A stretch of DNA of 64,000 nucleotides from the IMG/VR virus record IMGVR_UViG_3300020477_000990, positions 248,001 to 312,000 of that record. The stretch is one strand, 5' to 3'. The notes below the pieces were generated by a model. That model was not told where the DNA came from. It saw only the letters and a list, made by a program, of their open reading frames with translations, and ran no database searches. Below, one piece after another: positions 2,903-44,256 of the stretch. A program made the translations under genes and the position numbers. Each line of letters starts with the position of its first letter. Within the stretch, counting starts at the first letter, position 1.

Positions 2903-3988
2903 ATGAACTATTATAATACTTACAATAGAATCGAAATAGAAATCACTTCAAAATGTAATGCGAGGTGTCCTGGTTGTTCTAGAAATGTAAATGGAATAAC
3001 AAATCCTCAATTACAAGTACAAGATTTATCATCTGAAAATTTTATAAAGTACGTCCCTAAAGAAGCATTAAAAGGAAAAAAGATTGAGTTTTGTGGGGTG
3101 TTTGGTGATCCAGTAATGCACAAAGATTTTATTACTATTGTAGAACATTGCCGATTATCAGAACCTTATTCTATTTCTATAGATACAAATGGTGGATCAC
3201 AGCCAACTAGTTGGTGGGAAAAACTTGCAACACTAGGAGTTGAAGTACAATGGAGTGTTGATGGTCATAGAAAAACAAATCATTTGTATAGAGTAAATGT
3301 AAAGTTTGATAAAATTTTAGAAAATATGAAAGCATTTTCTAAAGCAGGTGGTAAAGGTACATGGGAGTATATTGTATTTGATCATAATGAAAGTGAAATT
3401 AGTATAGCTAAAAAAGAAGCTCATGCTTTAGGTTTTGATTTTAATATTAGAAGAAATAGCAGAAATAATGAAGAAGGTTATATATCATACATTAAAGAAA
3501 AAGTAGCTGGAAAAGTTGTAACTACAAAATTTAAGGTAACACAATCAAATCCAGTACATAAGCATAGTGAAACAGAAACAGCTAAAAAAGAAGTCCAAAA
3601 AGATAATTTGCAAATTAGTTGTTTACTATATAATGATAAAAAAATGTTTTTAGGATTTGATGGACGTATTTGGCCTTGTTGTTGGTTCCATGATATCTAT
3701 AATGGTGCAGGTAATCCACAAGTAGAAGAAACATCACATGAATTAGCAACGCATCATAAACTTAAAAAATTAGATAGTAGGTATGGAGCCGGCTGGAATA
3801 GTATTATACACAATAGTTGGAATGATATATTAGGGCATGAATATTACCAAAAAATATTGCCAAATACATTTGATAGTACTAGCCCTAATTTTTTAAAAGA
3901 AGAAGCATTACCAAAATGTGCAAAAAAATGTAGGAAATCTGGAGCACTACGAGATGTAGAGCGAGTTAAATATATTGGTGATAAATAA
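2903..3988 (+). CDS. radical SAM enzyme with C-terminal SPASM/twitch domain (subfamily A)
   Basis: EITSKCNARCPGC (CxxxCxxC), FCGVFGDP, SVDG..TNHLYR; C-terminal SC...WPCC...C..KC. Confidence 0.85.
   Translation: MNYYNTYNRIEIEITSKCNARCPGCSRNVNGITNPQLQVQDLSSENFIKYVPKEALKGKKIEFCGVFGDPVMHKDFITIVEHCRLSEPYSISIDTNGGSQPTSWWEKLATLGVEVQWSVDGHRKTNHLYRVNVKFDKILENMKAFSKAGGKGTWEYIVFDHNESEISIAKKEAHALGFDFNIRRNSRNNEEGYISYIKEKVAGKVVTTKFKVTQSNPVHKHSETETAKKEVQKDNLQISCLLYNDKKMFLGFDGRIWPCCWFHDIYNGAGNPQVEETSHELATHHKLKKLDSRYGAGWNSIIHNSWNDILGHEYYQKILPNTFDSTSPNFLKEEALPKCAKKCRKSGALRDVERVKYIGDK
3980..3987 (+). promoter_or_regulatory. late promoter GATAAATA, leaderless geometry
   Basis: 5 nt before the ATG at 3993. Confidence 0.5.
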
Positions 3989-7321: not shown

Positions 7322-8590
7322 GTGGCAACTACATATACTAGAATTAAAAACAGACGTGGTTTAAGAGCAGATTTACCTCAGCCTTTAGCTGATGGTGAAA
7401 TTGGTTTAGCAACAGATACGAGAGAAGTTTACATAGGTGCTGGTACACAGGACTTATTAAACAGCGATGTACAAGTTACACCATTTTTAGATGCACAGAC
7501 AGTTGTATCAGGGGACCTAACAAATATAGATTCAGCTACTACAAATAATGGTTTATTGTTTTTTAATGTAACTGGAACTCAAACATTTACAGGTGACGGA
7601 ACTAATAAAAATTCATATACTATTAGTTCTGCTAATGTATCTATTCCATCTGGTAAATCACCAATTGGTTCAAGTTATGAATCACAAGACTTTGTTGTAA
7701 CAAAATATATAAATGGTAATCCTACGTTATTAGAAACATCAAAATATTCTATTGTTAATAGTGGTGGTAATTATCAAATTAACTTTATTACGGCTCCTGA
7801 AGCAGGTTCTAAAGTTTGTGTAGTTAAATGGACAGAAGCACAAACACGTGAACACGCAAGAGCAAGAGCAAGTTGGGAAGCAAGTAATTCAGCAGTATCA
7901 AGCTATAATAAATGGCAGGCAAATGATTTAGCAAACAACCAAGTATGGGTTGATATTACAACAGGAACTGGTATGGTACAGTTTGTAACAGCAGGTGAAA
8001 AGACAGCATTGGAAACTGCTAATGCAAATGATTCGATTAGTACAATTAACGAACCAGCAACTTATAGTTTCTTAGGAGAAAATACAACATTAGGTCATGT
8101 AGCAAGAAATGTTGCAATTGATTCTGATTTAAAAATTGATTTAGATACACCACAACAAGCATATAACGTTTCAAGATTTATTAATAAAAAACGTGGCCAA
8201 GTATCAAGAGTTGCAAACAATATTCAAATTTATACTGAAGCAAGTTATCCACAGTTTCAAACAAATCAATATGTATCTTTCATGAGAAAAGCAACATTGG
8301 CCGCTAATAGTAATGGAACAGTTTTAAGTTATGTAACAACAGAGGCTAACATATACAAAGTTGATTATAGTGTAAAATATAATAATGAATTTAGAGCAGG
8401 TACAATTTTAATTGCTACAGATGGAACTAATGCTACAATTAATGATAATTTCGTAGAAACCGGCGACACTTCTGCGGTGTCCTTTGCGGCGGCAATTAGT
8501 AGCGGAAAATTGCAATGGAACTGGGCAAACAGTCATGCAACAAACGTCGCGAACTTATCATACAAGATAGAACGTTGGTTACAGTCGTAA
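7322..8590 (+). CDS. virion fibre/baseplate protein with Mtd_N-like N-terminus
   Basis: RIKNRRGLRADLPQPLADGEIGLATDTREVYIG; beta-rich body; GTG start. Confidence 0.7.
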   Translation: MATTYTRIKNRRGLRADLPQPLADGEIGLATDTREVYIGAGTQDLLNSDVQVTPFLDAQTVVSGDLTNIDSATTNNGLLFFNVTGTQTFTGDGTNKNSYTISSANVSIPSGKSPIGSSYESQDFVVTKYINGNPTLLETSKYSIVNSGGNYQINFITAPEAGSKVCVVKWTEAQTREHARARASWEASNSAVSSYNKWQANDLANNQVWVDITTGTGMVQFVTAGEKTALETANANDSISTINEPATYSFLGENTTLGHVARNVAIDSDLKIDLDTPQQAYNVSRFINKKRGQVSRVANNIQIYTEASYPQFQTNQYVSFMRKATLAANSNGTVLSYVTTEANIYKVDYSVKYNNEFRAGTILIATDGTNATINDNFVETGDTSAVSFAAAISSGKLQWNWANSHATNVANLSYKIERWLQS

Positions 8591-13720: not shown

Positions 13721-13810
13721 GGAAGGGTGGCTGAGTGGTTGAAAGCACCGGTCTTGAAAACCGGCAAAGGCGCAAGTCTTTCCAGAGTTCGAATCTCTGC
13801 CCTTCCGCCA
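13721..13810 (+). tRNA. tRNA-Ser(TGA)
   Basis: GGAAGGG/CCCTTCC acceptor, CCGGT-cttgaaa-ACCGG anticodon arm, long variable arm, GTTCGAATC, CCA. Confidence 0.96.
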
Positions 13811-18006: not shown

Positions 18007-20076
18007 ATGAATACTAAAGACTTAACGCGATACAGAAATATAGGTATTATTGCCCACGTTGATGCTGGTAAAACAACTACAACAGAAAGAATATTATACT
18101 ATACCGGAAAATCCCATAAAATTGGTGAAGTTCACGATGGAGCCGCGACAACGGACTACATGGAACAAGAACAAGAACGTGGTATAACAATTACATCAGC
18201 GGCAACTACAGTTTTTTGGAACGATCACAGAATTAACATTATTGATACACCAGGACACATTGACTTTAACATTGAAGTAAACAGATCATTAAGAGTACTT
18301 GATGGTGCTGTAGTAGTATTTGATGGAGTTGCAGGTGTAGAACCACAATCAGAAACAAACTGGCGTTTAGCAGATCAATACAGAGTTCCAAGACTTTGTT
18401 TTGTAAACAAATTAGATAGAACAGGTGCAGATTTTTTAAGATGTGTTGAAATGATTAAAGAAAGACTAGGTGCAAAACCAGTTATAATGACAATACCAAT
18501 TGGTGCAGAATCTAATTTGCAAGGTATTGTAGATTTAGTTACAATGAAAGCAATAGTTTGGGATGGAGAGCAATTAGGTGCTTCATTTAATGAGCAAGAA
18601 ATTCCAGAAGATATGAAAGCTGATGCTGAAAAATATAGAACAGAATTAATTGATACTGTAGTTGAACAAGATGAAGCTGTAATGGAATCATATTTAGAAG
18701 GTGAAGAACCAACAGTAGAACAAATTAAGTCTTGTGTTAGAAAAGGTACAGTTGCATTTGATTTTGTTCCTGTATTATGTGGTAGTGCATTTAAAAATAA
18801 AGGTGTACAACCTTTACTAGATGCAGTAGTTGATTACTTACCTGCACCAACAGAAGTTGATGCAATATATTCTATAGATGAAAATGGTGAACAAAAAGAT
18901 CCTATTAAATCTGACCCGTCATTACCATTTAGTGCGTTAGCATTTAAAATTATTAATGACAAGTATGGTGCATTAACATTTGCTAGAGTATATAGTGGTA
19001 AGGCAAGTTCAGGACATACACTTTACAATTCAACAAGAGATGAAAAAGAACGTATTGGTAGAATATATGAAATGCACGCCAATTCAAAAGAAGAAGTAAA
19101 AAATATACAAGCTGGTGATATTATTGCATTTGTAGGATTAAAAAATGTTACTACAGGTGATACTTTAGTTGCAGAAGATAGTGAAGTAGTATTAGAAAGA
19201 ATGGTGTTTCCAGAACCAGTTATTGATATTGCAGTAGAACCAAAAACAAAAGATGACCAAGAAAAAATGGGAGAAGCACTTGGTAAGTTTGTACAAGAAG
19301 ATCCAAGTTTACGAGTTAAAACAGATCAAGAAACAGGTCAAACAATTTTAAGTGGAATGGGTGAATTGCATTTAGAAATTATTGTTGATAGAATGAAAAG
19401 AGAATTTAAAGTTGGCGCCAATATTGGTAAGCCACAAGTTGCTTATAGAGAAACAATAACAAAACCATATGAAGTAACATATACACATAAAAAACAATCA
19501 GGTGGTTCAGGACAATTTGCACATATTGTTTGTAATATTGAACCAGGACAACGTGGTGATGGGTATACATTTGAAGATGAAATTAAAGGTGGTAATGTTC
19601 CTAAAGAATTTATACCATCAGTTGAAGATGGGTTTAAAACACAAGGCTATTCAGGAGTATTAGCAGGATGGCCAACAGTAGATTATAAAGTTACATTGTT
19701 AGATGGAAAATATCACGAAGTAGATTCATCAGCAATAGCATTTGAAATTGCGGCAAAGGCCGCTTTTAGAGAAGGTATGAAACAAGCAGGACCAGTATTA
19801 TTAGAACCTATGATGAAAGTTGAAGTTATTACACCTGAAGAATATTTAGGAGATGTAATAGGTGATTTAAGTTCACGTAGAGGACAAATTAGAGGGCAAG
19901 AACCAAGAGGTAATGGATTAGTGTTAGATGCATTAGTTCCTTTAGCCCAAATGTTTGGATATGTTGGTAATTTACGTTCTTTAACAAGCGGTAGAGCGTC
20001 ATACAGCATGGAATTTAATAGTTATGAAATTGTACCAAGCAATGTACAAGAAGAAATAGTAGCAGGAAACCAATAA
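18007..20076 (+). CDS. fusA: elongation factor G
   Basis: [57 protein letters not shown]; 689 aa. Confidence 0.98.
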
Positions 20077-20079
20077 TGT

Positions 20080-20319
20080 ATGGGGATACTAGATTTACAT
20101 GGATATTATATACATGAAGCTTGGGAAGAGTTTAAAAAGTTTATTGATGATAGTCAAGATATGAAATATGTAACAGTTATTACAGGCAAAGGTAAAATGC
20201 AAGAAGAATTCCAACATTGGGTTGATACAAATCCAAAGTTGAAATCCTGTGAGTTACTACCAACTGGTGGTGCTTACAAGGTATATTACAAGAAAGATAA
20301 GAGGAGTCAAAGTGAATAA
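20080..20319 (+). CDS. stand-alone Smr-domain endonuclease
   Basis: LDLHG and VITGKG motifs in 79 aa. Confidence 0.8.
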
Positions 20320-20515
20320 AGGTAAAATTAAATGGTTTAATCCGACTAAAGGTTACGGATTTATTGAAGACAGCGAAGGTGGTAAAGATGTATTTTTACA
20401 TATTTCTGCACTACACGAAGCTGGAATTGAGTCTATTACAGAAGGCGAAGAAGTTACTTTTGAAATAGGTGAAAATAGAGGCAAGCCTACCGCTATAAAT
20501 ATTAAAAAGGCATAA
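20312..20515 (+). CDS. cold-shock protein (CSD)
   Basis: GTG at 20312 after GAGGAG; KWFN..KGYGFI (RNP1), DVFLHIS (RNP2). Confidence 0.93.
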
Positions 20516-20525
20516 AGGAGACCAA

Positions 20526-20825
20526 ATGAGTACAGGTAAACTAAAATGGTATAATGGAGCAAAAGGATTTGGCTTTATAGTACCCTCAGATGGTAGCAAA
20601 GATGTTTTTGTTCATGTTACTGCATTTAAAGAAGCAGGCATAACAAAAATTGACCAAGGTCAAGCTCTTGAATTTGAGATTAAAGAGCATAACGGGAAAC
20701 CGGTTGCTACTGCTTTGAAATTATTAGAATCACCTGGTGATGAGTCTGCAGAAGTTAGTACTGAAGCAAAAGTTGAAGATAAAGCTGAAGAAACACCTGC
20801 AGAATCTGAAACACCAGCACAGTAA
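20526..20825 (+). CDS. cold-shock protein with acidic C-terminal tail
   Basis: KWYN..KGFGFI, DVFVHVT, then about 30 aa rich in E/A/S/T/P. Confidence 0.92.
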   Translation: MSTGKLKWYNGAKGFGFIVPSDGSKDVFVHVTAFKEAGITKIDQGQALEFEIKEHNGKPVATALKLLESPGDESAEVSTEAKVEDKAEETPAESETPAQ

Positions 20826-20838
20826 TAAGGAGTAGCAA

Positions 20839-21261
20839 ATGGCTAAAGAAGTAGTCGGGCTGATTAAATTACAAATTCCAGCCGGACAAGCCAAACCAGC
20901 CCCGCCAGTAGGGCCAGCTCTTGGACAGAGAGGTGTGAATATCATGGACTTCTGTAAGAAGTTTAATGATAAAACTAAAGCCATGGAAGGTCCAATACCT
21001 GTTACTATAACGGTCTATAAAGATAAGAGTTTCATTTTTGAGCTAAAACAACCACCAGTATCGTTTTTTATATTAAAAGCGGTTGGTTTAAAAAAAGGTG
21101 GCAGAACGCCTGGTCGTTCAGTTATTAAAAGAATAACTAAAGCACAGGTAAGAGAGATAGCTGAGAAAAAAATGGTTGATATGAATGCCTTCACAGTTGA
21201 GCAGGCGATGAAGCAAGTTGAAGGCTCATGTCGTTCGATGAGTATCGAAGTTGTCAAATAA
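20839..21261 (+). CDS. rplK: 50S ribosomal protein uL11
   Basis: [35 protein letters not shown]...GSCRSM. Confidence 0.97.
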
Positions 21262-21317: not shown

Positions 21318-21390
21318 TTTTTTGGTAGTAAGCCCAACGCCGGTAACGACGGTAAGCTGATCCCCACAATAATTTAATCGGAGACAGTCT

Positions 21391-21579
21391 ATGGAAAAAA
21401 TATTCAGATCCATGGGCGACGGACTCTTAATGGTTGGTGCCCTATTTTCTAAGAAGCATAGATCATTGGATGTTCCTGCCGACCAGTCGGATCAGGTTAA
21501 AAGGTTCAAAAGATGGTTATCCTACGAGCCATCTAAGCATTATTTAGGTGCTGGCCAAAAAAAGGACACGCATAAGTAA
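21391..21579 (+). CDS. small hypothetical protein (or part of an ncRNA)
   Basis: 62 aa; GGAG 7 nt upstream; atypical composition. Confidence 0.4.
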   Translation: MEKIFRSMGDGLLMVGALFSKKHRSLDVPADQSDQVKRFKRWLSYEPSKHYLGAGQKKDTHK

Positions 21580-21584
21580 TCTTC

Positions 21585-21613
21585 TTGACAAGATGCGTTG
21601 TTTCGTGTATTAT
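21585..21613 (+). promoter_or_regulatory. sigma70-type promoter TTGACA-N17-TATTAT overlapped by an 11-bp inverted repeat
   Basis: arms ATGCGTTGTTT 21593-21603 and AAACAACGCAT 21627-21637. Confidence 0.7.
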
Positions 21614-21646
21614 TATTAATATGCTAAAACAACGCATTTTGCATAT

Positions 21647-21696
21647 TGAGGTCTTAACGTCATCCCTCTTTAAAAATTCTGCCGTTTTATAGGAGG
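21647..21696 (+). ncRNA. candidate preQ1-I-like pseudoknot riboswitch in the queD leader
   Basis: GAGG/CCTC stem, loop running U...C, A-rich tail, AACG/CGTT second pairing next to AGGAGG. Confidence 0.4.
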
Positions 21697-21700
21697 AAAT

Positions 21701-22153
21701 ATGGGTAAACATTTAAGTACAAAAACATACGGACATAACATTGGTTTAAGTTCAGTATTTAGACAGCCTAATGCAGACCATTCACATTGTCATTTATTAC
21801 ATGGTTATAGTTTAGCATTTAAGTTCACATTTGGTTGTAATGAGCTAGATAATAAAAATTGGGCAGTAGATTTTGGTGGGCTAAAACCATTAAAAGCATG
21901 GTTAGAAGATAATTTTGATCATAAAGTTGCATTAGATAAAAACGATCCACATCTAGAAAAATTTAAAGAACTTGAGCAATTAGATTTAGCAGAGTTAAGA
22001 ATATTTGATGGAGTTGGTGCTGAAAAATTTGCGGAACACGCCTTTAACTTTGCAGATAAATTAATTAGAGAAAAAACAAATAATAGATGCTATTGTATAG
22101 AAGTTGAATGTGCGGAGCATGGAGCCAATTCAGCAATATATCGTAATGAATGA
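21701..22153 (+). CDS. queD: 6-carboxy-tetrahydropterin synthase / PTPS family
   Basis: HCHLLHGYS, VDFGGLK, FDHK, GAEKFA, VECAE. Confidence 0.85.
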   Translation: MGKHLSTKTYGHNIGLSSVFRQPNADHSHCHLLHGYSLAFKFTFGCNELDNKNWAVDFGGLKPLKAWLEDNFDHKVALDKNDPHLEKFKELEQLDLAELRIFDGVGAEKFAEHAFNFADKLIREKTNNRCYCIEVECAEHGANSAIYRNE

Positions 22154-22799
22154 TGATTATCAAAATTCAGGGTATCCTAATTGGGGTATGCTTGGAGAAT
22201 TAATTAAAGAAACAAAACCTAAAATAGTTGTAGAAATAGGAACATACTACGGAGGGTGGACAAAGTTTCTTTCTGAGAATACTAGTCCAGATACAAGAAT
22301 TTTTACATTTCAAACACCTGAACGTAGAAGATTAAATCATTTAGCAGATACTACACAAGGAGAAAATAATATTCTTCCTGATTTTGTGGTAGAAGCTTTA
22401 ACTCAAGATTATCCAGAAACTTGGGGAAATTTTACTGCACAAAATTGGAAGGATTTAGCAAAGCAAAGTCTAGACAAAAAATATCATGGAATGTATGATT
22501 TTAATTTACTTGCTGATGCAATTAGTAATGATAAAAAAATTACTTGTATTTTAGCAACTTCTCCACTATCATATCCATGGCCAGTTAAGTATGATTTATG
22601 CACAATAAATCTTTCATATCATTTAGATGACAATTTAAAGCAAATAGATTATTGGATAAAATATGCCAAAAAGAATGGAATTTTATGTATTAGTTCATAT
22701 GGGTCTATAGATAAAATTCAAGAAATTTACGGAAAAGATCATAAAGTAAAACGATGGAGTAATGGTTACTTATGGATTTACGGCAAGTCAAAAATATAA
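22146..22799 (+). CDS. class I SAM-dependent methyltransferase (Methyltransf_24-like)
   Basis: ATG at 22146; PKIVVEIGTYYGGWT motif I. Confidence 0.7.
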   Translation: MNDDYQNSGYPNWGMLGELIKETKPKIVVEIGTYYGGWTKFLSENTSPDTRIFTFQTPERRRLNHLADTTQGENNILPDFVVEALTQDYPETWGNFTAQNWKDLAKQSLDKKYHGMYDFNLLADAISNDKKITCILATSPLSYPWPVKYDLCTINLSYHLDDNLKQIDYWIKYAKKNGILCISSYGSIDKIQEIYGKDHKVKRWSNGYLWIYGKSKI

Positions 22800-24213: not shown

Positions 24214-24569
24214 CCAAGTCCGAGGTAGTTAATCTTGTTATTGATGATATTAATGAAATTAAAACACAAGAAATACTAAATGAACAGGCCAATGTTTCAA
24301 CGGTCGAAGAGTATAAGGTTGAAAAGCCAGATGAAATTTTGGTTGAAAATATTAAAATTGAACCAAAACCAGAAGTTGAAATGAAATTTAAAGAAGAAGT
24401 AAATGTTAGGATGAAGGAAATAGAAAAAAAGATTGACACAGAGCAAAATCGTGTTATTATTAATAAAACTATGAAAAATGAAAGTTTAAAGAAAACAACA
24501 AATACTTCACAAGAAATTGGATGGCTAAAAGGCTATGTTGGCAAGATTGCTGGAGATAAAGAAGAATAA
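24192..24569 (+). CDS. frame-3 continuation of the preceding gene, reached via the A9 run
   Basis: frame open from 24192 to TAA at 24569; no ATG in the first ~60 codons. Confidence 0.55.
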   Translation, partial: HREKKRITKSEVVNLVIDDINEIKTQEILNEQANVSTVEEYKVEKPDEILVENIKIEPKPEVEMKFKEEVNVRMKEIEKKIDTEQNRVIINKTMKNESLKKTTNTSQEIGWLKGYVGKIAGDKEE

Positions 24570-25258
24570 TGGATTGGACAAATTTAGACAAAGTTGAGTT
24601 TGCTATTACAACACATTGTCAAGCTAAATGTCCGTTGTGTGCTAGAACCAATAAAGAAACTTTAGAAAAAGTAAATTGGTTGCCATTGCATCATTTATCT
24701 TTAGATGAATACAAAAATGCTGTTGATCAATTGTTACCTAATAGAGATATAGATTTTTGTGGTGATTACGGTGATCCAATAATGCATCCACAAATTGAAG
24801 ATTTTATTGATTATGCTATACAAAAAAATCACAATGTAAGTGTACACACAAATGGTGGCTTACGTACAAAAGATTGGTATATTAAAGTTGCAAAGAAATA
24901 TAATAAACTTTTAATGGTGTTTGCTATTGATGGAATAGACGAAGAAACAAATTCAAAATATAGAGTAGGAGTTAACTTTAATCGTGCTTGGGAAAATATG
25001 ATAGCTCATGCAGAAAATAGTAATGGGCATACAGTTTGGAACTTTTTAGTATTTGATTTTAATTATGATCAATTAGATAGAGCAAAAGAATTGTGTCAGA
25101 AACATAATATTATATTTGTTCCACATATGAATACTAGAGTAACAGAATACTATGATCATTTAATTAAAGATTTAACTTTAAAAGTGCAATTAGAACAAAA
25201 GTGTGATAATATGTATGATCCAAAATTAACAGAAAGAGTAGCTTTATATGTCGATTAA
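24569..25258 (+). CDS. radical SAM core (subfamily A) without its SPASM domain
   Basis: CQAKCPLC, FCGDYGDP, HTNGG, AIDG..TNSKYR, WNFLVF. Confidence 0.85.
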   Translation: MDWTNLDKVEFAITTHCQAKCPLCARTNKETLEKVNWLPLHHLSLDEYKNAVDQLLPNRDIDFCGDYGDPIMHPQIEDFIDYAIQKNHNVSVHTNGGLRTKDWYIKVAKKYNKLLMVFAIDGIDEETNSKYRVGVNFNRAWENMIAHAENSNGHTVWNFLVFDFNYDQLDRAKELCQKHNIIFVPHMNTRVTEYYDHLIKDLTLKVQLEQKCDNMYDPKLTERVALYVD

Positions 25259-25532
25259 TTGCAAATCAAAAGGTATCATTGTTGATTATAATAATAAAGT
25301 TTACCCTTGTTGCTATGTATTAACTAGAGAAATGTTTCCTGAAGAAAAAAGTAAATATTTAAGTAAGTTAGATAATGATTGGAATGATTTATCAAAGTAT
25401 ACATTAGAAAAAATATTAAGTAATAAAGCATTTACTGAACATTTCAATGAAAAACATTGGAATGATAAAAACAACTGCGATGAGATATGTACGTCTCAAT
25501 GCTCAATAAAGAAAGAAAAAAATAATGCCTAA
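25248..25532 (+). CDS. stand-alone SPASM/twitch domain
   Basis: INC...VYPCC...CDEICTSQC. Confidence 0.75.
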
Positions 25533-26796
25533 GAAAAAAGACGAACAATTTAGTTGTTCATTTTGTGGAAAAAATAGAGAGAAAGTAAAAAAACTTATTG
25601 CAGGACCAAAGGTTTATATTTGTAATGAGTGTATTGAACTTTGTCATTCAATTTTAGAAGAAAGTGATTTACGTCAAGTAGAAGAACGTAAGCAAGAATT
25701 AAAACAAATTATACCAGATGAATTAAAAGCACATTTAGATGAACACGTAATTGGTCAAGAACAAGCTAAAAAAGTTTTAAGTGTAGCAGTATATAACCAT
25801 TATAAAAGATTAGCTAATCCTATAGTAGATGGTGTTGAACTTGAAAAATCAAATGTTTTATTAGTAGGACCAAGTGGCTGTGGTAAAACATTATTAGCAA
25901 AACGTATAGCAGATTATTTAGATGTTCCATTTGCTCAAGCAGATGCAACTACATTAACTGAAAGTGGATATGTTGGCGATGATGTAGAAAATATTATATT
26001 AAGATTATTACAAAATTGTGATTTTGATGTAGCAAAAGCAGAAAAAGGTATTGTTTATATTGATGAAATAGATAAAAAATCACGTAAGTCTGAGTCAACT
26101 TCTATTACTAGAGATGTATCAGGAGAAGGTGTGCAACAAGCATTATTAAAATTGCTTGAAGGTACTATAGTGAGAGTTCCACCAGCTGGTGGAAGAAAAC
26201 ACCCACAGCAAGAAATGATTACTGTTGACACTACAAATATTTTATTTGTTGTAGGTGGAGCATTTGTTGGGTTAGAGGAAATTATTCGTAAAAGACTTAA
26301 TTTGAATACAACAATAGGATTTAATTCTTCATCACCATCAAAAGAAGAAATTGAAAGAGTATTAGAAAGAGCTGAACCAGATGATATAGTTAAATTTGGA
26401 TTAATTCCTGAAATGGTAGGTAGGTTGCCAGTTGTTGTTGCTTGTCATAAACTTGATAAACAACATTTAAATGATATTCTTGTTAAACCTAAAAGTGCCA
26501 TATTAAAGCAATTCCAAAAAATGTTTAAGTTAGATGGAATTGAATTAGAGTTTAGTGATGAAGCAATTGAAGTTGTATGCACTTTAGCATTAAAAAAAGA
26601 TATAGGTGCTAGAGGACTAAGATCTGTTTTAGAAAAGCATTTATTACAATTACAATACGAGTTACCAATGCTTAAAGAACAAGGTGTTGAACGTATTGCA
26701 ATTAATGAAACTTTTATAACAGAAGGAAAGCCACCAATGTTAATATATAAAGAAGTAAATAAAGATAAAGACGGAACGGATAACGGAGCGAAGTGA
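25525..26796 (+). CDS. clpX: ClpX ATPase
   Basis: CSFCG/CNEC zinc domain, [36 protein letters not shown] loop, GARGLR. Confidence 0.97.
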
Positions 26797-27350
26797 AAAA
26801 GCATTTCATTAGAAGAAACAACAAACCAACGGTATTATTAAACTCTGCAATTACCTTTCCAGAAATTAGGTTAATTGATCCAGATGGACAATTTATTGGA
26901 ATAGTTCGAAATCAAGAAGCACATCAAAAAGCCAGAGATGCAGGATTAGATTTAATTTGTATTGCCGATAAGGCAAGTCCTCCTGTTTGCCGTATTATGG
27001 ACTTTGGTAAATGGAATTATGAAAAACAAAAAGCCGATAAGGAAAAGAAAAAGAAAGAACGAGCTAATCGAATTGAATTGCATGAAGTACAATTAAGACC
27101 AGGAACAGATGTTCATGATCTTAAAGTTAAATTAAAAAAAGTACAAGAATTTATAGATGATGGAGATAAAGTAAAAATGGTAATGAAGTTACGAGGTAGA
27201 GAAATTGGGCAAGGAACTATGTTTGTAGATCAATTAAAAGTTATGGTTGCTGGCCAATTAGAATTAGGTAAATTTGATTCTCCACCAAAGCAGTTTGGTA
27301 ATAAAATTATTGCAACAGTTTCTAAACAAAATGAGAAAAAAAATGCTTGA
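26793..27350 (+). CDS. infC: translation initiation factor IF-3
   Basis: [39 protein letters not shown]; GTG start after GGAG. Confidence 0.93.
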
Positions 27351-28476: not shown

Positions 28477-28801
28477 CCCACCAACAGATCAAAAATGGGC
28501 CCATACTTGGCTAACAGAGTTAGTGTCTAAAATTGGCATGGAAATATGCCAAGGTCCTATTACAACGTATGTAAATGTACCAGGTAATAGAGGCTTAACC
28601 GGTCTAGTAATTATAGAAACATCACATATAGCATTGCATTGTTGGGATGAAACTGATCCTGGCTTATTACAATTAGATGTTTATACCTGTGGAAGTTTGC
28701 CAACTGATGTTATATTTGAAGAAATTAAACAATTTGATCCTGTTAAAGTTGAATACAAATACTTAAATAGAGAACGAGGTTTAACAGAGATTAATATATA
28801 G
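28433..28801 (+). CDS. speD: S-adenosylmethionine decarboxylase (pyruvoyl type)
   Basis: HKHLI, GLTGLVIIETSHIALHCW, LDVYTC. Confidence 0.85.
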   Translation: MIEHKHLIVRAEVNNPPTDQKWAHTWLTELVSKIGMEICQGPITTYVNVPGNRGLTGLVIIETSHIALHCWDETDPGLLQLDVYTCGSLPTDVIFEEIKQFDPVKVEYKYLNRERGLTEINI

Positions 28802-28876
28802 GCGATTAGCTCAGTTGGTTAGAGCATTCCCTTGATAAGGGAAAGGTCGTAAGTTCGAGTCTTACATCGCCTACCA
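28800..28876 (+). tRNA. tRNA-Ile(GAT)
   Basis: AGGCGAT/ATCGCCT acceptor, TTCCC-ttgataa-GGGAA, CCA. Confidence 0.95.
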
Positions 28877-28877
28877 C

Positions 28878-28953
28878 GGGTGATTAGCTCAGTTGGTAGA
28901 GCACCTCGTTTACACCGAGGGGGTCGTTGGTTCGAGTCCAGCATTACCCACCA
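28878..28953 (+). tRNA. tRNA-Val(TAC)
   Basis: CCTCG-tttacac-CGAGG anticodon arm, TTCGA, CCA. Confidence 0.95.
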
Positions 28954-28954
28954 T

Positions 28955-29031
28955 GGAGTGTTAGCTCAACTGGTTAGAGCACCCGCCTGTCACGCGGGAG
29001 GTTGAGGGTTCGAGTCCCTTACACTCCGCCA
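28955..29031 (+). tRNA. tRNA-Asp(GTC)
   Basis: GGAGTGT/ACACTCC acceptor, CCCGC-ctgtcac-GCGGG, CCA. Confidence 0.96.
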
Positions 29032-31252: not shown

Positions 31253-33145
31253 ATGAGTAAAATAATTGGTATTGACTTAGGTACAACAAACTCTTGCGTA
31301 TCCATTATGGAAGGTAAGGGAGCCAAAGTTATAGAAAATGCAGAAGGTACTAGAACAACACCATCTGTAGTATCGTTTGGAGATGAACGATTAGTAGGTA
31401 CACCAGCAAAAAGACAGGCTGTTACAAATCCTACTAATACGGTTTTTGCTTCTAAACGTTTAATAGGAAGAAAATTTGATGGAGATTCTGTACAAAAAGA
31501 CATACAGACATCACCATTTAAAATTGTAAAGGCGGAAAATGGAGATGCTTGGGTAGAAGCTAACAACGAAAAATACTCACCATCACAAATTTCGGCTTTC
31601 GTTCTTCAAAAAATGAAAGAAACAGCAGAAAAGTATTTAGGACAAGAAGTAACTAAAGCGGTTATTACTGTTCCTGCGTACTTTAACGATTCACAAAGAC
31701 AAGCAACTAAAGATGCAGGTAAAATTGCAGGACTTGAAGTTGAAAGAATTGTGAATGAACCAACTGCGGCGGCACTTGCCTACGGTTTAGATAAGAAAAA
31801 AACTGGTACGGTTGCTGTATATGACTTAGGTGGAGGTACTTTTGATATTTCTATTTTAGAAATAGGTGACGGAGTATTTGAAGTTAAGTCAACAAATGGT
31901 GATACATCATTGGGTGGTGAAGATTTTGACAATGCATTAGTAGATTATATACTTGCAGAGTTCAAAAAAGACTCAGGTGTAGACTTAAGAAATGATAATC
32001 TTGCACTTCAACGTGTAAGAGAGGCGGCAGAAAAGGCAAAATGTGAATTATCATCTGCAACACAAACAGATATTAGTTTACCATTTATTACTGCTGACAA
32101 ATCTGGACCAAAACATTTAAATCTTAAATTAACAAGAGCTAAATTTGAATCATTGGTTGATGATCTAGTTGATAGAACATTGCAACCATGTAAACAAGCT
32201 CTAAAAGATTCAGGATTTAGTGCTGGAGACATTAGTGAAGTTATTCTTGTAGGTGGTATGACAAGAATGCCTAAAGTTCAAAAAGCAGTTCAAGACTTTT
32301 TTGGTAAAGAACCAAATAAAAGTGTAAATCCAGATGAAGTAGTAGCAATTGGAGCCGCAATTCAAGGTGGTGTATTACAAGGTGATGTTAAAGATGTGTT
32401 ACTTTTAGATGTAACACCATTATCACTTGGTATTGAAACACTTGGAGGTGTATGCACGAAGCTAATTGAAAAGAATACAACTATTCCTACAAAGAAAAGT
32501 CAAGTATTCTCAACTGCTGATGATGGTCAAACGGCAGTTACTATTAGAGTAATGCAAGGTGAACGTGAAATGGCCGCTGATAATAAGTTACTAGGTAACT
32601 TTGACTTGGTAGGTATTGCATCTGCACCAAGAGGTGTACCTCAAATTGAAGTAACATTTGATATTGATGCTAATGGTATCGTAAATGTTAGTGCAAAAGA
32701 CAAAGGTACTGGCAAAGAACAAAAGATACAAATACAAGCATCAGGTGGATTAAGTGAAACTGAAATCGATAAGATGGTAAAAGACGCTGAAGCCAATAAA
32801 GAAGCAGATAAAAAGAAAAGAGAAGAAGTAGATGTTAAGAATCAAGCAGATACAATGATTCATTCTACTGAAAAAACTCTTAAAGAACATGGCGATAAGT
32901 TATCAACAGAAGATAAAAAGAAAGTTGAAGACGACTTGACTGCATTAAAAGATGTAATATCTTCTGGAAATAGCGAAACAATTAAGGATAAAATTAAATC
33001 TTTAACTGAATCAGCTATGAAGTTAGGTGAAGCTGTATATAAAGATCAGCAACAACAAACATCTAATAATAATGAAAATGCTTCTAACGATGCAAAAAAC
33101 AACGATAATGTTGTTGATGCAGACTTTGAAGAAGTTAAGAAATAA
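31253..33145 (+). CDS. dnaK: Hsp70 chaperone DnaK
   Basis: [39 protein letters not shown]-type linker region, C-terminal DADFEEV. Confidence 0.98.
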
Positions 33146-42786: not shown

Positions 42787-44256
42787 ATGAGCAATAATAA
42801 ACTACCATCAAAAACGTTTTGTGCGTTACCGTGGATGCATTTATCAACTAGACCAGATGGAAATATGCGAGTATGTTGTACAGCTAACGCAAGTTCAGTA
42901 GGTGCAACTAATGATAAAAAGCATGGTGGACAAGTTGGTATTCTAAAAAAAGATAATGGTGTTCCTGCAAACTTAAATAATTCAGATTTAATGTCATCGT
43001 GGAATAATGATTATATGAAGAACGTTCGTTTACAAATGTTAAACGGAGAAAAACCACCAGCTTGTTTAAAATGTTTTAAAGAAGAAGATGCAGGTCATAA
43101 TTCAAAACGTATGTGGGAAACTGAATATTGGATGAATAGATATTCTTTAGAAGATATGATTGGTGAAACAAAAGAAGACGGTTCTATTCCACCTAAAATT
43201 AGATATATTGATTTGCGTATGGGATCTAAATGTAATTTAAAATGTATTATGTGTAGTCCACATGATTCTTCATTATGGGTCAAAGATTGGTTAGACGTAT
43301 ATCCTACAATTAAAAATCCACAGCTAAAGCAAACAATGGGTTGGGATAATAAAGGTAAAGTACATGGCGCTGGTTATAACTGGCATAAAAATAACGAAGT
43401 ATTTTGGAAGCAGTTATATGAGCAAATACCTCATATGTATCAATTATATTTTGCAGGCGGTGAGTCTACAATTATAGAAGAACATTATACATTATTAGAA
43501 GAAGTTATTAGAAGAGGATATGCTCCTAAAATAGAATTACGTTATAATTCAAATGGTGTTGAAATGCCAGATAGATTATTTGAATTATGGAGTCATTTTA
43601 AAAGAGTGCGTTTTCATTATAGTGTAGATTCAATTGAAGAAATGAATCGTTATATACGTTTTCCTGCAGATTGGGATAATACAGTTAAACAATTTCATTT
43701 GTTAGATAATACAGAAGATAAAGTAGAAGTAACAATTGCCTGTGCAGTACAGGCTTTGAATATACATTATATTCCAGATTTTATTAAATGGAAATGGAAA
43801 CAAAATTTTAAAAAAATAAATGTATGGCCATTTGGAGCAGGTATGTTAAATTATCACTTTGTATATTGGCCTGGGCAATTAAATGTAAAAGCATTGCCAC
43901 AATGGATGAAAAATAAAACAAAAGAAAAATATGAAGCATTTTATCCTTGGTTATTAGAAAATTGGAAACTATCCGGTGCACCAAGTAAAGAAGCATTTAT
44001 GGAAGCAAGTTACGGTATTAAAAGATTAAAAGGAATGATTCAATTTATGATGTCAGAAGATTGGTCAAGACGTATGCCAGAATTTAGAGAATATATTACA
44101 AAATTTGATAAGCAACGTGGCACAGATTTTGCTAAAACTTTTCCGGATATGGCTGATATGTTAGATGAGTCATTAGATTATAGTGTTAAACCAATAACCG
44201 GTGAAAGTATTGATGAAAAAACAGAGAAGGAATTAGAAGATGGCGGAACAATCTGA
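42787..44256 (+). CDS. radical SAM enzyme with N-terminal SPASM/twitch domain (subfamily B)
   Basis: FCALPW...RVCC, CLKC, CNLKCIMC, FAGGE, YNSN. Confidence 0.88.
   Translation: MSNNKLPSKTFCALPWMHLSTRPDGNMRVCCTANASSVGATNDKKHGGQVGILKKDNGVPANLNNSDLMSSWNNDYMKNVRLQMLNGEKPPACLKCFKEEDAGHNSKRMWETEYWMNRYSLEDMIGETKEDGSIPPKIRYIDLRMGSKCNLKCIMCSPHDSSLWVKDWLDVYPTIKNPQLKQTMGWDNKGKVHGAGYNWHKNNEVFWKQLYEQIPHMYQLYFAGGESTIIEEHYTLLEEVIRRGYAPKIELRYNSNGVEMPDRLFELWSHFKRVRFHYSVDSIEEMNRYIRFPADWDNTVKQFHLLDNTEDKVEVTIACAVQALNIHYIPDFIKWKWKQNFKKINVWPFGAGMLNYHFVYWPGQLNVKALPQWMKNKTKEKYEAFYPWLLENWKLSGAPSKEAFMEASYGIKRLKGMIQFMMSEDWSRRMPEFREYITKFDKQRGTDFAKTFPDMADMLDESLDYSVKPITGESIDEKTEKELEDGGTI

What the first reader, a model, noticed from the sequence alone, without database searches (positions are those of the whole stretch)
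21647..21696. preQ1-I-like pseudoknot upstream of phage queD
Seen: stem GAGG (21648-51) / CCTC (21665-68), a 13-nt loop starting with U and ending in C, a TTTAAAAA tail, and loop AACG (21656-59) complementary to CGTT (21683-86), 4 nt before AGGAGG. Established: preQ1-I aptamers are small H-type pseudoknots with these features (B. subtilis queC: AGAGG/CCUCU, last loop C reads the ligand, A-rich L3) and they regulate que genes. Loop 3 here is longer than canonical. Inference: a phage riboswitch variant sensing preQ0/preQ1 or a related purine or pterin.
Basis: partly seen in the sequence, partly recalled or inferred. Interest (0 to 1): 0.7.

Follow-up and report, generated by a model that had tools for sequence, protein, structure and literature searches.

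The report
Phage QueD leader pseudoknot switch
A 40-nt RNA pseudoknot in front of the QueD gene of this 328-kb marine phage is conserved, with compensatory base changes, in front of QueD genes in well over a hundred uncultured phage contigs; it looks like an undescribed riboswitch-type translational switch that resembles the preQ1-I class but does not belong to it.

Summary
In 35 distinct leaders of close QueD homologs, and in 38 more found by a gene-blind DNA pattern, 94% of cells pair. Only 30-52% pair when partners are slid, and most variable pairs show compensatory changes. A covariance model finds exactly one copy in this genome and in each of five other 222-357 kb phage genomes. All 109 copies found lie just 5' of a QueD-like gene, with protein identity from 33% to 90%. 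Refined anatomy: P1 is 4-5 bp. L2 is 2 nt and ends in an invariant C (21664). L3 is A-rich and ends in an invariant A-N-U-C. Rfam 15 holds no matching family. The preQ1-I model scores 10.7 bits against a cut-off of 39 on this copy and gives no hit on three other representatives. In most leaders the 3' strand of P2 can instead pair with the start-codon region. In the window, the 3' strand of P1 can pair with the Shine-Dalgarno sequence. Folding of the pseudoknot should therefore free the ribosome site, which is ON logic and the opposite of preQ1-I. The ligand is unknown. The phages encode FolE, QueD and QueE but no full-length QueC and no TGT/DpdA.

The parts
21585..21613 (+). Sigma-70-type promoter, TTGACA-17 nt-TATTAT. 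The predicted transcript starts near 21620, about 28 nt 5' of P1.
   Evidence: 11 of 12 consensus matches, the best site in the scanned region. This is a consensus match only. 61 of 92 related leaders also have a TATAAT-like hexamer within 40 nt upstream.
21646..21690 (+). The whole conserved pseudoknot element, as matched by covariance model R1.
   Evidence: 56.4 bits, E 4e-11 to 6e-11, and the only hit in the 328-kb genome.
21648..21651 (+). P1 5' strand, GAGG.
   Evidence: Pairs with 21665-21668. Covariation: GC29/AU5/CG1 and AU18/CG14/UA3 at the two outer pairs, with the inner G-G/C-C invariant. There are 8 different 5' strand types among 83 copies.
21652..21655 (+). L1, UCUU. The first letter varies (A47/U25/C11), the next two (C, U) are invariant, and inserts of variable length follow in homologs.
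21656..21659 (+). P2a 5' strand, AACG.
   Evidence: Pairs with 21683-21686. All four pairs show 3-5 standard pair types.
21660..21660 (+). Invariant U facing invariant C21682, a conserved U.C mismatch inside P2.
   Evidence: Invariant columns in A1.
21661..21662 (+). P2b 5' strand, CA.
   Evidence: C21661-G21681 is invariant. A21662-U21680 is A-U in 77 copies and G-C in 6, with no exception.
21663..21664 (+). L2, UC. The first letter varies. C21664 is invariant and unpaired, lies next to P1, and is the candidate ligand-pairing base.
   Evidence: The P1 register is fixed by the covarying outer pairs, which leaves this C unpaired.
21665..21668 (+). P1 3' strand, CCUC. In the window it is also the anti-Shine-Dalgarno strand.
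21669..21679 (+). L3. It is A-rich (UUUAAAAA) and ends in the invariant A-N-U-C (A21676, U21678, C21679).
   Evidence: There are two length classes.
21680..21681 (+). P2b 3' strand, UG.
21682..21682 (+). Invariant C opposite U21660.
21683..21686 (+). P2a 3' strand, CGUU. In most homologs this is the switching strand.
21665..21696 (+). Predicted alternative (pseudoknot-free) fold of the window copy. 21665-21670 pairs with the Shine-Dalgarno sequence 21691-21696, and 21673-21677 pairs with 21684-21688.
   Evidence: Minimum-free-energy and centroid structures.
21691..21696 (+). Shine-Dalgarno sequence, AGGAGG.
21701..22153 (+). QueD-like gene (PTPS/T-fold family), 150 aa. This is the regulated gene.
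   Evidence: PF01242 4.5e-14. phrog_2389 3.9e-41. It belongs to the same HC-x3-HGY subfamily as the QueD of phages Iggy, Motura and BUCT-ZZ01, which sit in 7-deazaguanine gene clusters.
22146..22799 (+). Downstream gene whose start overlaps the QueD stop (ATGAATGA). Probably a class I SAM-dependent methyltransferase.
   Evidence: Sequence. The protein-atlas neighbours are Methyltransf_24 clusters at scores of 0.94-0.97, which is a lead only. No Pfam, PHROG or NCBIfam hit.

Best explanation
The element is the sensor domain of a cis-acting translational switch on the QueD mRNA. It is an H-type pseudoknot transcribed from the promoter at 21585-21613. Shown: P1 (21648-51 with 21665-68) and P2 (21656-62 with 21680-86, containing one conserved U.C mismatch) are maintained by compensatory changes. 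The unpaired letters C-U in L1, C21664 in L2 and A-N-U-C at the end of L3 are invariant. There is one copy per genome, always directly 5' of a QueD-family gene. Inferred from predicted alternative folds: when the pseudoknot is not formed, its 3' half pairs with the translation initiation region. In the window, the P1 3' strand CCUCUU pairs with AGGAGG. In most homologs, the P2 3' strand and the letters after it pair with the AUG and its flanks. In a third group, a CCUAUG/CAUAGG hairpin shares its two C's with P2 and covers the Shine-Dalgarno sequence. Formation of the pseudoknot therefore frees the ribosome site, which is an ON switch. Inferred from analogy: the fold is stabilised by a small ligand stacked between P1 and P2 and paired to the invariant C21664. 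The ligand would be a molecule with a guanine-like face from the GTP -> H2NTP -> CPH4 -> CDG/preQ0/preQ1 pathway, or a pterin. ON logic favours a substrate-side or supply signal such as H2NTP, a related pterin or GTP over the end product preQ1.
For: Covariation supports both helices in two sets. P1 is not part of the model's structure, so its covariation is independent of the model fit. The set A3 was collected by a DNA pattern without reference to any gene, yet all 43 model hits lie 15-34 nt 5' of a QueD-like ORF of 33-86% identity. 66 of 81 close-homolog sources have one copy each, at the same place. This genome and five other large phage genomes have exactly one copy each. Expression platform: 71 of 95 distinct leaders have at least 6 contiguous pairs between the P2 3' region and the AUG region, with a mean of 6.2 against 3.0 after shuffling. 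The letter after the anti-AUG triplet pairs with position -1 of the AUG in 71 of 90 leaders, using four pair types (UA22/CG24/AU17/GC7). In 70 of 90 leaders the helix shares at least 1 nt with the P2a 3' strand. Window copy: the Shine-Dalgarno sequence is fully paired to 21665-21670 in both the MFE and the centroid fold. Pathway context: FolE and a QueE-like radical SAM protein are present in this genome. QueE-like is present in all five large genomes tested.
Against: No ligand is known and none could be tested. The ON logic rests on thermodynamic predictions of helices 4-11 bp long, and the platforms are heterogeneous. The window copy lacks the anti-AUG helix that is typical of its relatives. 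Activating a biosynthetic gene with a ligand is less common than feedback repression. About one in five close QueD homologs, and all four cultured phages checked that carry deazaguanine gene clusters, lack the element, so it is dispensable. A protein effector is not excluded. Single-sequence folding energy is not unusual (z -0.11). Metatranscriptome contigs do not cover the leader.
Confidence: 0.55

Rival explanations
1. It is a divergent but true preQ1-I riboswitch. preQ1 or preQ0 would bind the C that ends L2 and switch QueD translation OFF, as in bacterial que operons.
For: RF00522 is the only Rfam family that aligns to the window copy. It covers P1, the loop ending in UC, and the UAAAAA tail. 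The pseudoknot topology matches, P1 is 4-5 bp, and the element is associated with a que gene.
Against: The score is 10.7 bits against a gathering score of 39, and ranks 7th of 11 noise-level hits in the genome. Three other representatives of the family give no RF00522 hit. The first L1 letter is variable (A47/U25/C11), whereas in preQ1-I, from established structures, it is a conserved U. The invariant A-N-U-C-Y-G-C block and the 6-9 bp P2 have no counterpart in preQ1-I. The Shine-Dalgarno sequence lies 4-30 nt beyond P2, and the P2 3' strand is complementary to the AUG region, which predicts ON rather than OFF.
Confidence: 0.12
2. The pseudoknot is a protein-binding operator on the mRNA. The partner could be QueD itself (autogenous control) or a phage or host translational regulator. 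Alternatively it is a ligand-free device, such as a thermosensor or a folding element that keeps the ribosome site open.
For: Pseudoknotted leaders used for autogenous translational control are established in T4-type phages (gene 32; from knowledge). The element travels strictly with QueD across 33-90% protein identity, which would also fit recognition by QueD.
Against: The element is small, has invariant unpaired letters clustered at the P1/P2 junction, and carries a competing helix. These are the usual signature of metabolite aptamers. QueD proteins that differ by up to 67% would have to keep recognising an almost unchanged RNA core. No RNA-binding domain is detectable in QueD, which has the PF01242 domain only. 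The complex predictor gave no usable result.
Confidence: 0.2
3. The element is a chance pair of short helices, or a DNA-level element such as an operator, or part of the upstream terminator, with no RNA function of its own.
For: Each helix in the window is only 4 bp long in an AT-rich leader. A strong terminator-like hairpin lies immediately upstream.
Against: Both crossing helices show compensatory changes in two independent sets. The chance expectation for the pattern in the window is 0.00. The model E-value is 4e-11. A double-stranded DNA site would conserve sequence, not pseudoknot pairing. The upstream hairpin (21589-21642) is not conserved with the element.
Confidence: 0.02

Closest known systems
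preQ1-I riboswitch (Rfam RF00522)
   Same: A small H-type pseudoknot with a 4-5 bp G/C-anchored P1. L2 ends in a C directly 5' of the P1 3' strand. The A-rich L3 could lie in the P1 minor groove. It is found in leaders of queuosine/7-deazaguanine pathway genes.
   Different: It fails the Rfam model (10.7 against 39 bits, or no hit at all). P2 is 6-9 bp with a conserved U.C mismatch rather than 3-4 bp. L2 is 2 nt. An invariant A-N-U-C-Y-G-C block precedes the P2 3' strand. The first L1 letter is not conserved. The Shine-Dalgarno sequence is not inside P2. The predicted logic is ON. It was found only in phage contigs and four MAG contigs.
Other pseudoknot riboswitches (SAM-II/SAM-V, preQ1-II, guanidine-III)
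   Same: Classic H-type topology, with the ligand expected at the helix junction and a loop lying in a groove. They act as translational control elements.
   Different: No Rfam hit to any of them at E up to 10 on 50-201 nt searches. The conserved letters and the gene association are different.
Riboswitches previously seen in phages (glutamine aptamers in cyanophages, c-di-GMP-I in C. difficile prophages; McCown et al. 2017, PMC5473149)
   Same: A metabolite-type cis-regulatory RNA carried on a phage genome in front of an auxiliary metabolic gene.
   Different: Those are copies of classes that are common in bacteria. This element was not found in front of any of the 76 other cellular-genome QueD homologs examined, and no bacterial class matches it.
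T4 gene 32 mRNA leader pseudoknot (autogenous translational control; from knowledge)
   Same: A 5' leader pseudoknot of a large phage that governs translation initiation.
   Different: The gene 32 element is a nucleation site for its own single-strand-binding protein. Here the regulated protein is a T-fold enzyme with no known RNA binding.

Membership tests
preQ1-I riboswitch (RF00522) | Score at or above the curated gathering score of the Rfam covariance model (39 bits) | tested here: not met
   The window copy scores 10.7 bits and matches only model positions 6-34 of 45. L018, L019 and L009 give no RF00522 hit at E up to 10. Nothing is found at gathering thresholds in the whole window.
preQ1-I riboswitch (RF00522) | H-type pseudoknot with a 5-bp P1 and a loop-to-tail P2 | tested here: met
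   Both helices are supported by covariation. P1 is 4-5 bp.
preQ1-I riboswitch (RF00522) | Short P2 (3-4 bp) directly following a 6-8 nt A-rich L3 (consensus ...AAAAAACUA; from established structures) | tested here: not met
   P2 is 4-6 variable pairs, then a U.C mismatch, then 2 more pairs. L3 ends in an invariant A-N-U-C, and U-G-C enters P2.
preQ1-I riboswitch (RF00522) | Ligand-pairing C as the last L2 letter, next to the P1 3' strand | tested here: met
   C21664 is invariant in 83 of 83 distinct copies and is left unpaired by the covariation-fixed register. It aligns to the corresponding C of RF00522. Its role in ligand binding is untested.
preQ1-I riboswitch (RF00522) | Conserved U as the first L1 letter, which contacts the ligand (from established structures) | tested here: not met
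   The first L1 letter is A in 47, U in 25 and C in 11 copies. The invariant letters are the next two, C and U.
preQ1-I riboswitch (RF00522) | Binds preQ1/preQ0 | not testable with these tools
   Needs in-line probing, ITC or a similar assay.
preQ1-I riboswitch (RF00522) | Expression platform: the P2 3' strand overlaps the Shine-Dalgarno sequence (or a terminator follows), giving an OFF switch | tested here: not met
   The Shine-Dalgarno sequence lies 4-30 nt 3' of P2. The P2 3' strand is complementary to the AUG region in most leaders. No terminator-like site lies between the aptamer and the gene.
Riboswitch (generic) | Conserved structured aptamer with covariation and invariant junction letters in a 5' UTR | tested here: met
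   Promoter-like sites lie just upstream.
Riboswitch (generic) | Mutually exclusive alternative pairing that involves the ribosome binding site or a terminator | tested here: met
   In silico only.
Riboswitch (generic) | Direct, selective binding of a small molecule without protein | not testable with these tools
   The complex predictor refuses RNA-ligand jobs and did not fold the RNA-protein job.
QueD / PTPS (T-fold) family, for the regulated gene | Pfam PF01242 domain above its cut-off | tested here: met
   52.9 bits against 22.4. phrog_2389 3.9e-41.
QueD / PTPS (T-fold) family, for the regulated gene | NCBIfam equivalog TIGR03367 (QueD) above its cut-off | tested here: not met
   33.2 bits against 89.25.
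QueD / PTPS (T-fold) family, for the regulated gene | Canonical C-x3-H-G-H catalytic and zinc motif | tested here: inconclusive
   The subfamily has an invariant H-C-x3-H-G-Y, with Tyr in place of the last His. The same variant occurs in the QueD of phages Iggy, Motura and BUCT-ZZ01, which lie inside QueE/QueC/FolE/DpdA clusters, so it is compatible with QueD function.
QueD / PTPS (T-fold) family, for the regulated gene | Partner enzymes of the 7-deazaguanine pathway in the same genome | tested here: inconclusive
   FolE (3.6e-48) and QueE-like (about 1e-53) are present. No full-length QueC was found, only C-terminal 55-aa matches. No TGT/DpdA was found.

The most novel reading that the evidence does not exclude
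This is a new riboswitch class essentially restricted to phages. It is abundant in marine, and some freshwater, large phages. It switches translation of QueD ON in response to a pterin or 7-deazapurine pathway metabolite that no known riboswitch senses, for example the FolE product H2NTP or a neopterin-type pterin. It would gate the first committed step of a phage FolE-QueD-QueE route that stops at 7-carboxy-7-deazaguanine.
Probability: 0.35. Interest if true: 0.9.

Novelty: new variant of a known kind. Interest (0 to 1): 0.8.

Why it matters
Surveys have concluded that phages rarely use riboswitches, and have suggested that they may use undiscovered classes (McCown et al. 2017, PMC5473149). 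This is a compact RNA of about 40 nt with strong covariation. It occurs in one copy per genome in front of one auxiliary metabolic gene, across QueD proteins as little as 33% identical. No family in Rfam 15 matches it, and the searchable literature held nothing on it. If it binds a metabolite, it would be a phage-borne sensor for the queuosine/7-deazaguanine or pterin pathway. It would give a handle on what the widespread FolE-QueD-QueE gene set, which lacks QueC and DpdA, does during infection. It would also show how a preQ1-I-like fold can be rebuilt into a switch of opposite polarity. Its small size makes it easy to test biochemically and structurally.

Tried and rejected
Rfam at gathering thresholds on the whole window found only six tRNAs. 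Permissive Rfam searches of the leader gave only spurious microRNA-type hits to the upstream hairpin and a faint PreQ1 hit.

A blastn search of the locus against cultured phages found no match. Cultured phages with related QueD genes (BUCT-ZZ01, Cellulophaga phi19:2, Iggy, Motura) were fetched and searched with filters off. They have no motif; the best score was 10.5 bits.

Bacterial and archaeal genomes gave 80 QueD-like loci. The motif occurs in only four MAG contigs. Whether these are mis-binned phage DNA or prophages was not checked.

The first alignment, A4, was too divergent for the locus finder.

The QueD trimer plus RNA job was counted but not folded. These give no evidence either way.

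Metatranscriptome contigs cover the neighbouring ORF and the QueD coding start but not the leader, so they neither support nor refute transcription of the element.

I looked for a second copy in front of FolE or QueE and found none. There is a single hit per genome.

I tested whether motif-less relatives carry QueC or DpdA. They do not, so presence of the motif does not track pathway completeness.

Seven literature searches found no description of this element. One further search failed on a term format, and one search on PTPS in cyanophages gave nothing relevant. McCown et al. 2014 on the preQ1 classes is not held, so the preQ1-I features used in the membership test come from established knowledge and from the RF00522 alignment.

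Full report
CONTEXT. The window is bases 248001-312000 of a 328,149-bp IMG/VR virus record with direct terminal repeats, estimated complete. Near-identical DNA occurs in many marine metagenome runs. The window has about 30% G+C and almost all genes lie on one strand. It encodes ribonucleotide reductase, DnaK, ClpX, EF-G, ribosomal protein L11, an initiation-factor-like protein, an NAD synthetase-like protein, several radical SAM proteins and six tRNAs. The gene at 21701-22153 has the PTPS/QueD domain (PF01242 4.5e-14; phrog_2389 'QueD-like' 3.9e-41). It falls below the NCBIfam QueD equivalog cut-off, at 33 against 89 bits.

THE OBSERVATION. A strong sigma-70-type promoter, TTGACA-17-TATTAT at 21585-21613, places a transcript start near 21620, so the element lies in a 5' leader of about 80 nt. 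Single-sequence folding of the leader is not unusual (MFE -15 kcal/mol, z -0.11). Taken alone, two 4-bp helices would be weak evidence.

COMPARATIVE EVIDENCE.
The best 80, at 83-90% identity, were fetched.
- Their upstream 100 nt show the same motif with obvious compensatory changes.
- In a MAFFT alignment of 35 distinct leaders (A1), the pseudoknot has 94.0% of cells paired, against 37-51% when partners are slid by 1-3 columns. The covariation score is 0.598 against 0.06-0.18, and 0 of 500 shuffles reach it.
- The two outer P1 pairs show GC/AU/CG and AU/CG/UA. The four variable P2 pairs each show 3-5 pair types.
- Covariance model R1 was built with P2 as its structure. It finds one hit in 66 of 81 sources, always immediately 5' of the QueD start. 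It finds one hit in the whole 328-kb genome (56 bits, E 4e-11) and exactly one in each of five other phage genomes of 222-357 kb.

A GENE-BLIND TEST. A DNA pattern made only of invariant letters was scanned over IMG/VR. Of the 80 loci returned, 43 are R1 hits. All 43 lie 15-34 nt 5' of a QueD-like ORF, including proteins only 33-43% identical to the window's and 157-195 aa long. This set (A3) reproduces the pairing statistics: 94.5% paired, and a covariation score of 0.557 against at most 0.117. The same pattern matches the window once, with 0.00 expected.

REFINED ANATOMY (83 distinct copies; columns).
- P1 is N-N-G-G with C-C-N-N, often with a fifth pair. Window: 21648-51 with 21665-68.
- L1 starts with a variable letter (A47/U25/C11), followed by an invariant C-U and then 1-8 further letters.
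- P2a is 4-6 fully variable pairs. Window: 21656-59 with 21683-86.
- An invariant U.C mismatch follows (21660/21682).
- P2b is an invariant C-G (21661-21681) plus a pair that is A-U in 77 copies and G-C in 6, with no exception (21662-21680).
- L2 is one variable letter plus an invariant C (21664).
- L3 is A-rich, comes in two length classes, and ends in an invariant A-N-U-C.

RELATION TO KNOWN RNA FAMILIES. Rfam 15 has no matching family at gathering thresholds. In permissive searches of 50-58 nt, the only family aligning to the window copy is PreQ1 (RF00522). It scores 10.7 bits against a gathering score of 39 and covers model positions 6-34, which are P1, the loop and the A tail, but not the P2 3' part. 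Within the genome this hit ranks 7th of 11 noise-level hits. Three other representatives (L018, L019, L009) give no RF00522 hit at all. The resemblance to preQ1-I is real at the level of fold and a few letters: G/C-anchored P1, the C ending L2, and an A-rich L3. The defining model score, the short P2, the conserved first L1 letter and the Shine-Dalgarno sequence inside P2 are not met. Seven literature searches found no description of the element. A 2017 survey states that riboswitches are rarely found in phages (PMC5473149).

EXPRESSION PLATFORM. RNAfold of the distinct leaders shows a recurring alternative. The P2 3' strand, together with the letters after it, pairs with the start codon and its flanks, leaving the Shine-Dalgarno sequence in the hairpin loop. 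Arm pairs include CAUUAUUA/UAAUAAUG, CAUUGUU/AACAAUG, CAUC/GAUG and CAUA/UAUG.
- 71 of 95 distinct leaders have at least 6 contiguous pairs of this kind, with a mean of 6.2 against 3.0 after shuffling the spacer.
- The letter after the anti-AUG triplet pairs with position -1 of the AUG in 71 of 90 leaders, using four pair types.
- In 70 of 90 leaders the helix shares at least one letter with the P2a 3' strand.
- A second group has a CCUAUG-N11-CAUAGG hairpin. Its two C's are the end of P2 and its AGG is the start of the Shine-Dalgarno sequence.
- The window copy belongs to a third type. In both the MFE and the centroid fold, 21665-21670 (the P1 3' strand plus two U's) pairs with AGGAGG at 21691-21696, and 21673-21677 pairs with 21684-21688.

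In all three types the 3' half of the pseudoknot and the ribosome site compete for the same strand. Pseudoknot formation should therefore expose the site, which is ON logic. This is an inference from predicted structures, not a measurement.

PATHWAY CONTEXT.
- The QueD subfamily has an invariant H-C-x3-H-G-Y plus F-D-H and two Glu residues. The Tyr replaces the last His of the canonical motif (alignment to PDB 7v0f).
- The same variant occurs in the QueD of Pseudomonas phage Iggy, Achromobacter phage Motura and Synechococcus phage BUCT-ZZ01, which lie in clusters with QueE, QueC, FolE and DpdA/TGT. QueD function is therefore plausible. Those cultured phages lack the RNA element.
- This genome encodes FolE (3.6e-48) and a QueE-like radical SAM protein (about 1e-53) at 13-20 kb, next to a phosphoribosyltransferase.
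- It has no full-length QueC, only 55-aa C-terminal matches in two proteins. It has no TGT/DpdA.
- The four other large motif-bearing genomes tested also have QueE-like and lack QueC. All five other large motif-bearing genomes lack TGT. Motif-less relatives also lack QueC and TGT.
- Genes directly downstream of the regulated QueD vary. In the window it is a probable methyltransferase whose start overlaps the QueD stop. Elsewhere it is QueE-like, a glycosyltransferase, an aldolase or an epimerase. The one constant partner of the RNA is QueD.

DISTRIBUTION OUTSIDE VIRAL CONTIGS. Among 80 QueD-like loci from the species-representative genome collection, the element occurs only in four MAG contigs, labelled Rickettsiales (two contigs), Crocinitomicaceae and Polynucleobacter. 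I did not check whether these are phage or prophage DNA. It does not occur in Bradyrhizobium, Microvirga, Acetobacteraceae or marine group II archaeal homologs.

INTERPRETATION. The best-supported reading is a translational switch whose sensor is this pseudoknot. The features that argue for a small-molecule ligand bound at the P1/P2 junction are the small size, the invariant unpaired letters around that junction, the invariant C next to P1, and the strict association with one enzyme gene across deep divergence. The ON logic makes a substrate-side or supply signal such as H2NTP, a pterin or GTP somewhat more attractive than the end product. Rivals are a true preQ1-sensing variant, a protein-binding operator that might include QueD itself, and a ligand-free folding device. 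Chance or a DNA-level element is excluded by the covariation.

LIMITS. No binding, transcription-start or expression data could be obtained. Metatranscriptome contigs cover the flanking ORF and the QueD 5' end but not the leader. The complex predictor gave no usable output. The covariation counts treat sequences, not independent events; the 6 G-C copies of the P2b pair may stem from one or a few events.

Noticed in passing
window 21589-21642 (+): There is a long, near-perfect hairpin (dG -26.5 kcal/mol, z -5.6) followed by UUUUG, directly after the 62-aa ORF at 21391-21579. The -10 hexamer of the QueD promoter lies in its loop. It looks like an intrinsic terminator for the upstream L11-containing unit with the next promoter embedded in it. 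All the spurious microRNA-type Rfam hits fall on it.
   Followed up: partly
G000:C1:13000-20000 (locus L297), outside the window: A loose cluster holds FolE, a cytidylyltransferase-like protein, an FkbM methyltransferase, a phosphoribosyltransferase, a HIT protein, a redoxin and a QueE-like radical SAM protein. With the QueD at 269.7 kb this gives GTP -> CDG enzymes plus a PRTase, but no full-length QueC and no DpdA/TGT. Synechococcus phage BUCT-ZZ01 has a similar QueE-PRTase-QueD-FolE arrangement. The end product of this gene set is unclear.
   Followed up: partly
window 21701-22153 and homologs (alignment A4): The phage QueD subfamily has an invariant H-C-x3-H-G-Y in place of the canonical C-x3-H-G-H, and lacks the first canonical zinc His. 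How it binds metal, and what exactly it makes, may differ from bacterial QueD.
   Followed up: partly
loci L028, L046, L080, L083, L113, L127 and others, between the aptamer and the Shine-Dalgarno sequence: The loop of the CCUAUG/CAUAGG platform hairpin reads TGCTATAAT, a perfect extended -10 element. It could be a second promoter that produces a leaderless-aptamer transcript.
   Followed up: no
window 18007-21261, 25525-27350, 31253-33145; tRNAs at 13721, 28800-29031, 48664, 62507: The phage carries EF-G, ribosomal protein L11, a cold-shock-like protein, ClpX, an initiation-factor-like protein, DnaK and six tRNAs. Two of the tRNAs are Asp(GUC) and Asn(GUU), which belong to the four tRNA families that normally receive queuosine at position 34. 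This is a possible link to the QueD/QueE genes.
   Followed up: no
window 2903-3988, 24569-25532, 42787-44256, and genome-wide: The genome has an unusually large number of radical SAM/SPASM-type genes: 16 radical-SAM-like matches in the genome. At 24569-25258 and 25248-25532 a radical SAM core and a SPASM domain lie in two overlapping ORFs, which could be a split or frameshifted gene.
   Followed up: no
window 7322-8590: This ORF has an N-terminal match to the major tropism determinant Mtd (PF18454, 1.1e-06), which hints at a diversity-generating retroelement target.
   Followed up: no
window 21391-21579: A 62-aa ORF of clearly higher G+C than its surroundings has no family hit. A metatranscriptome contig matches it exactly over 21380-21564.
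   Followed up: no
G000:C1:81289-82182 and 107904-108698 (loci L294, L295): Two proteins of 298 and 265 aa match only the last 55 or so residues of QueC (PF06508 about 23-25 bits; phrog_1550 1e-6 to 3e-8). They may be PP-loop-type enzymes with a QueC-like zinc ribbon rather than QueC itself.
   Followed up: partly
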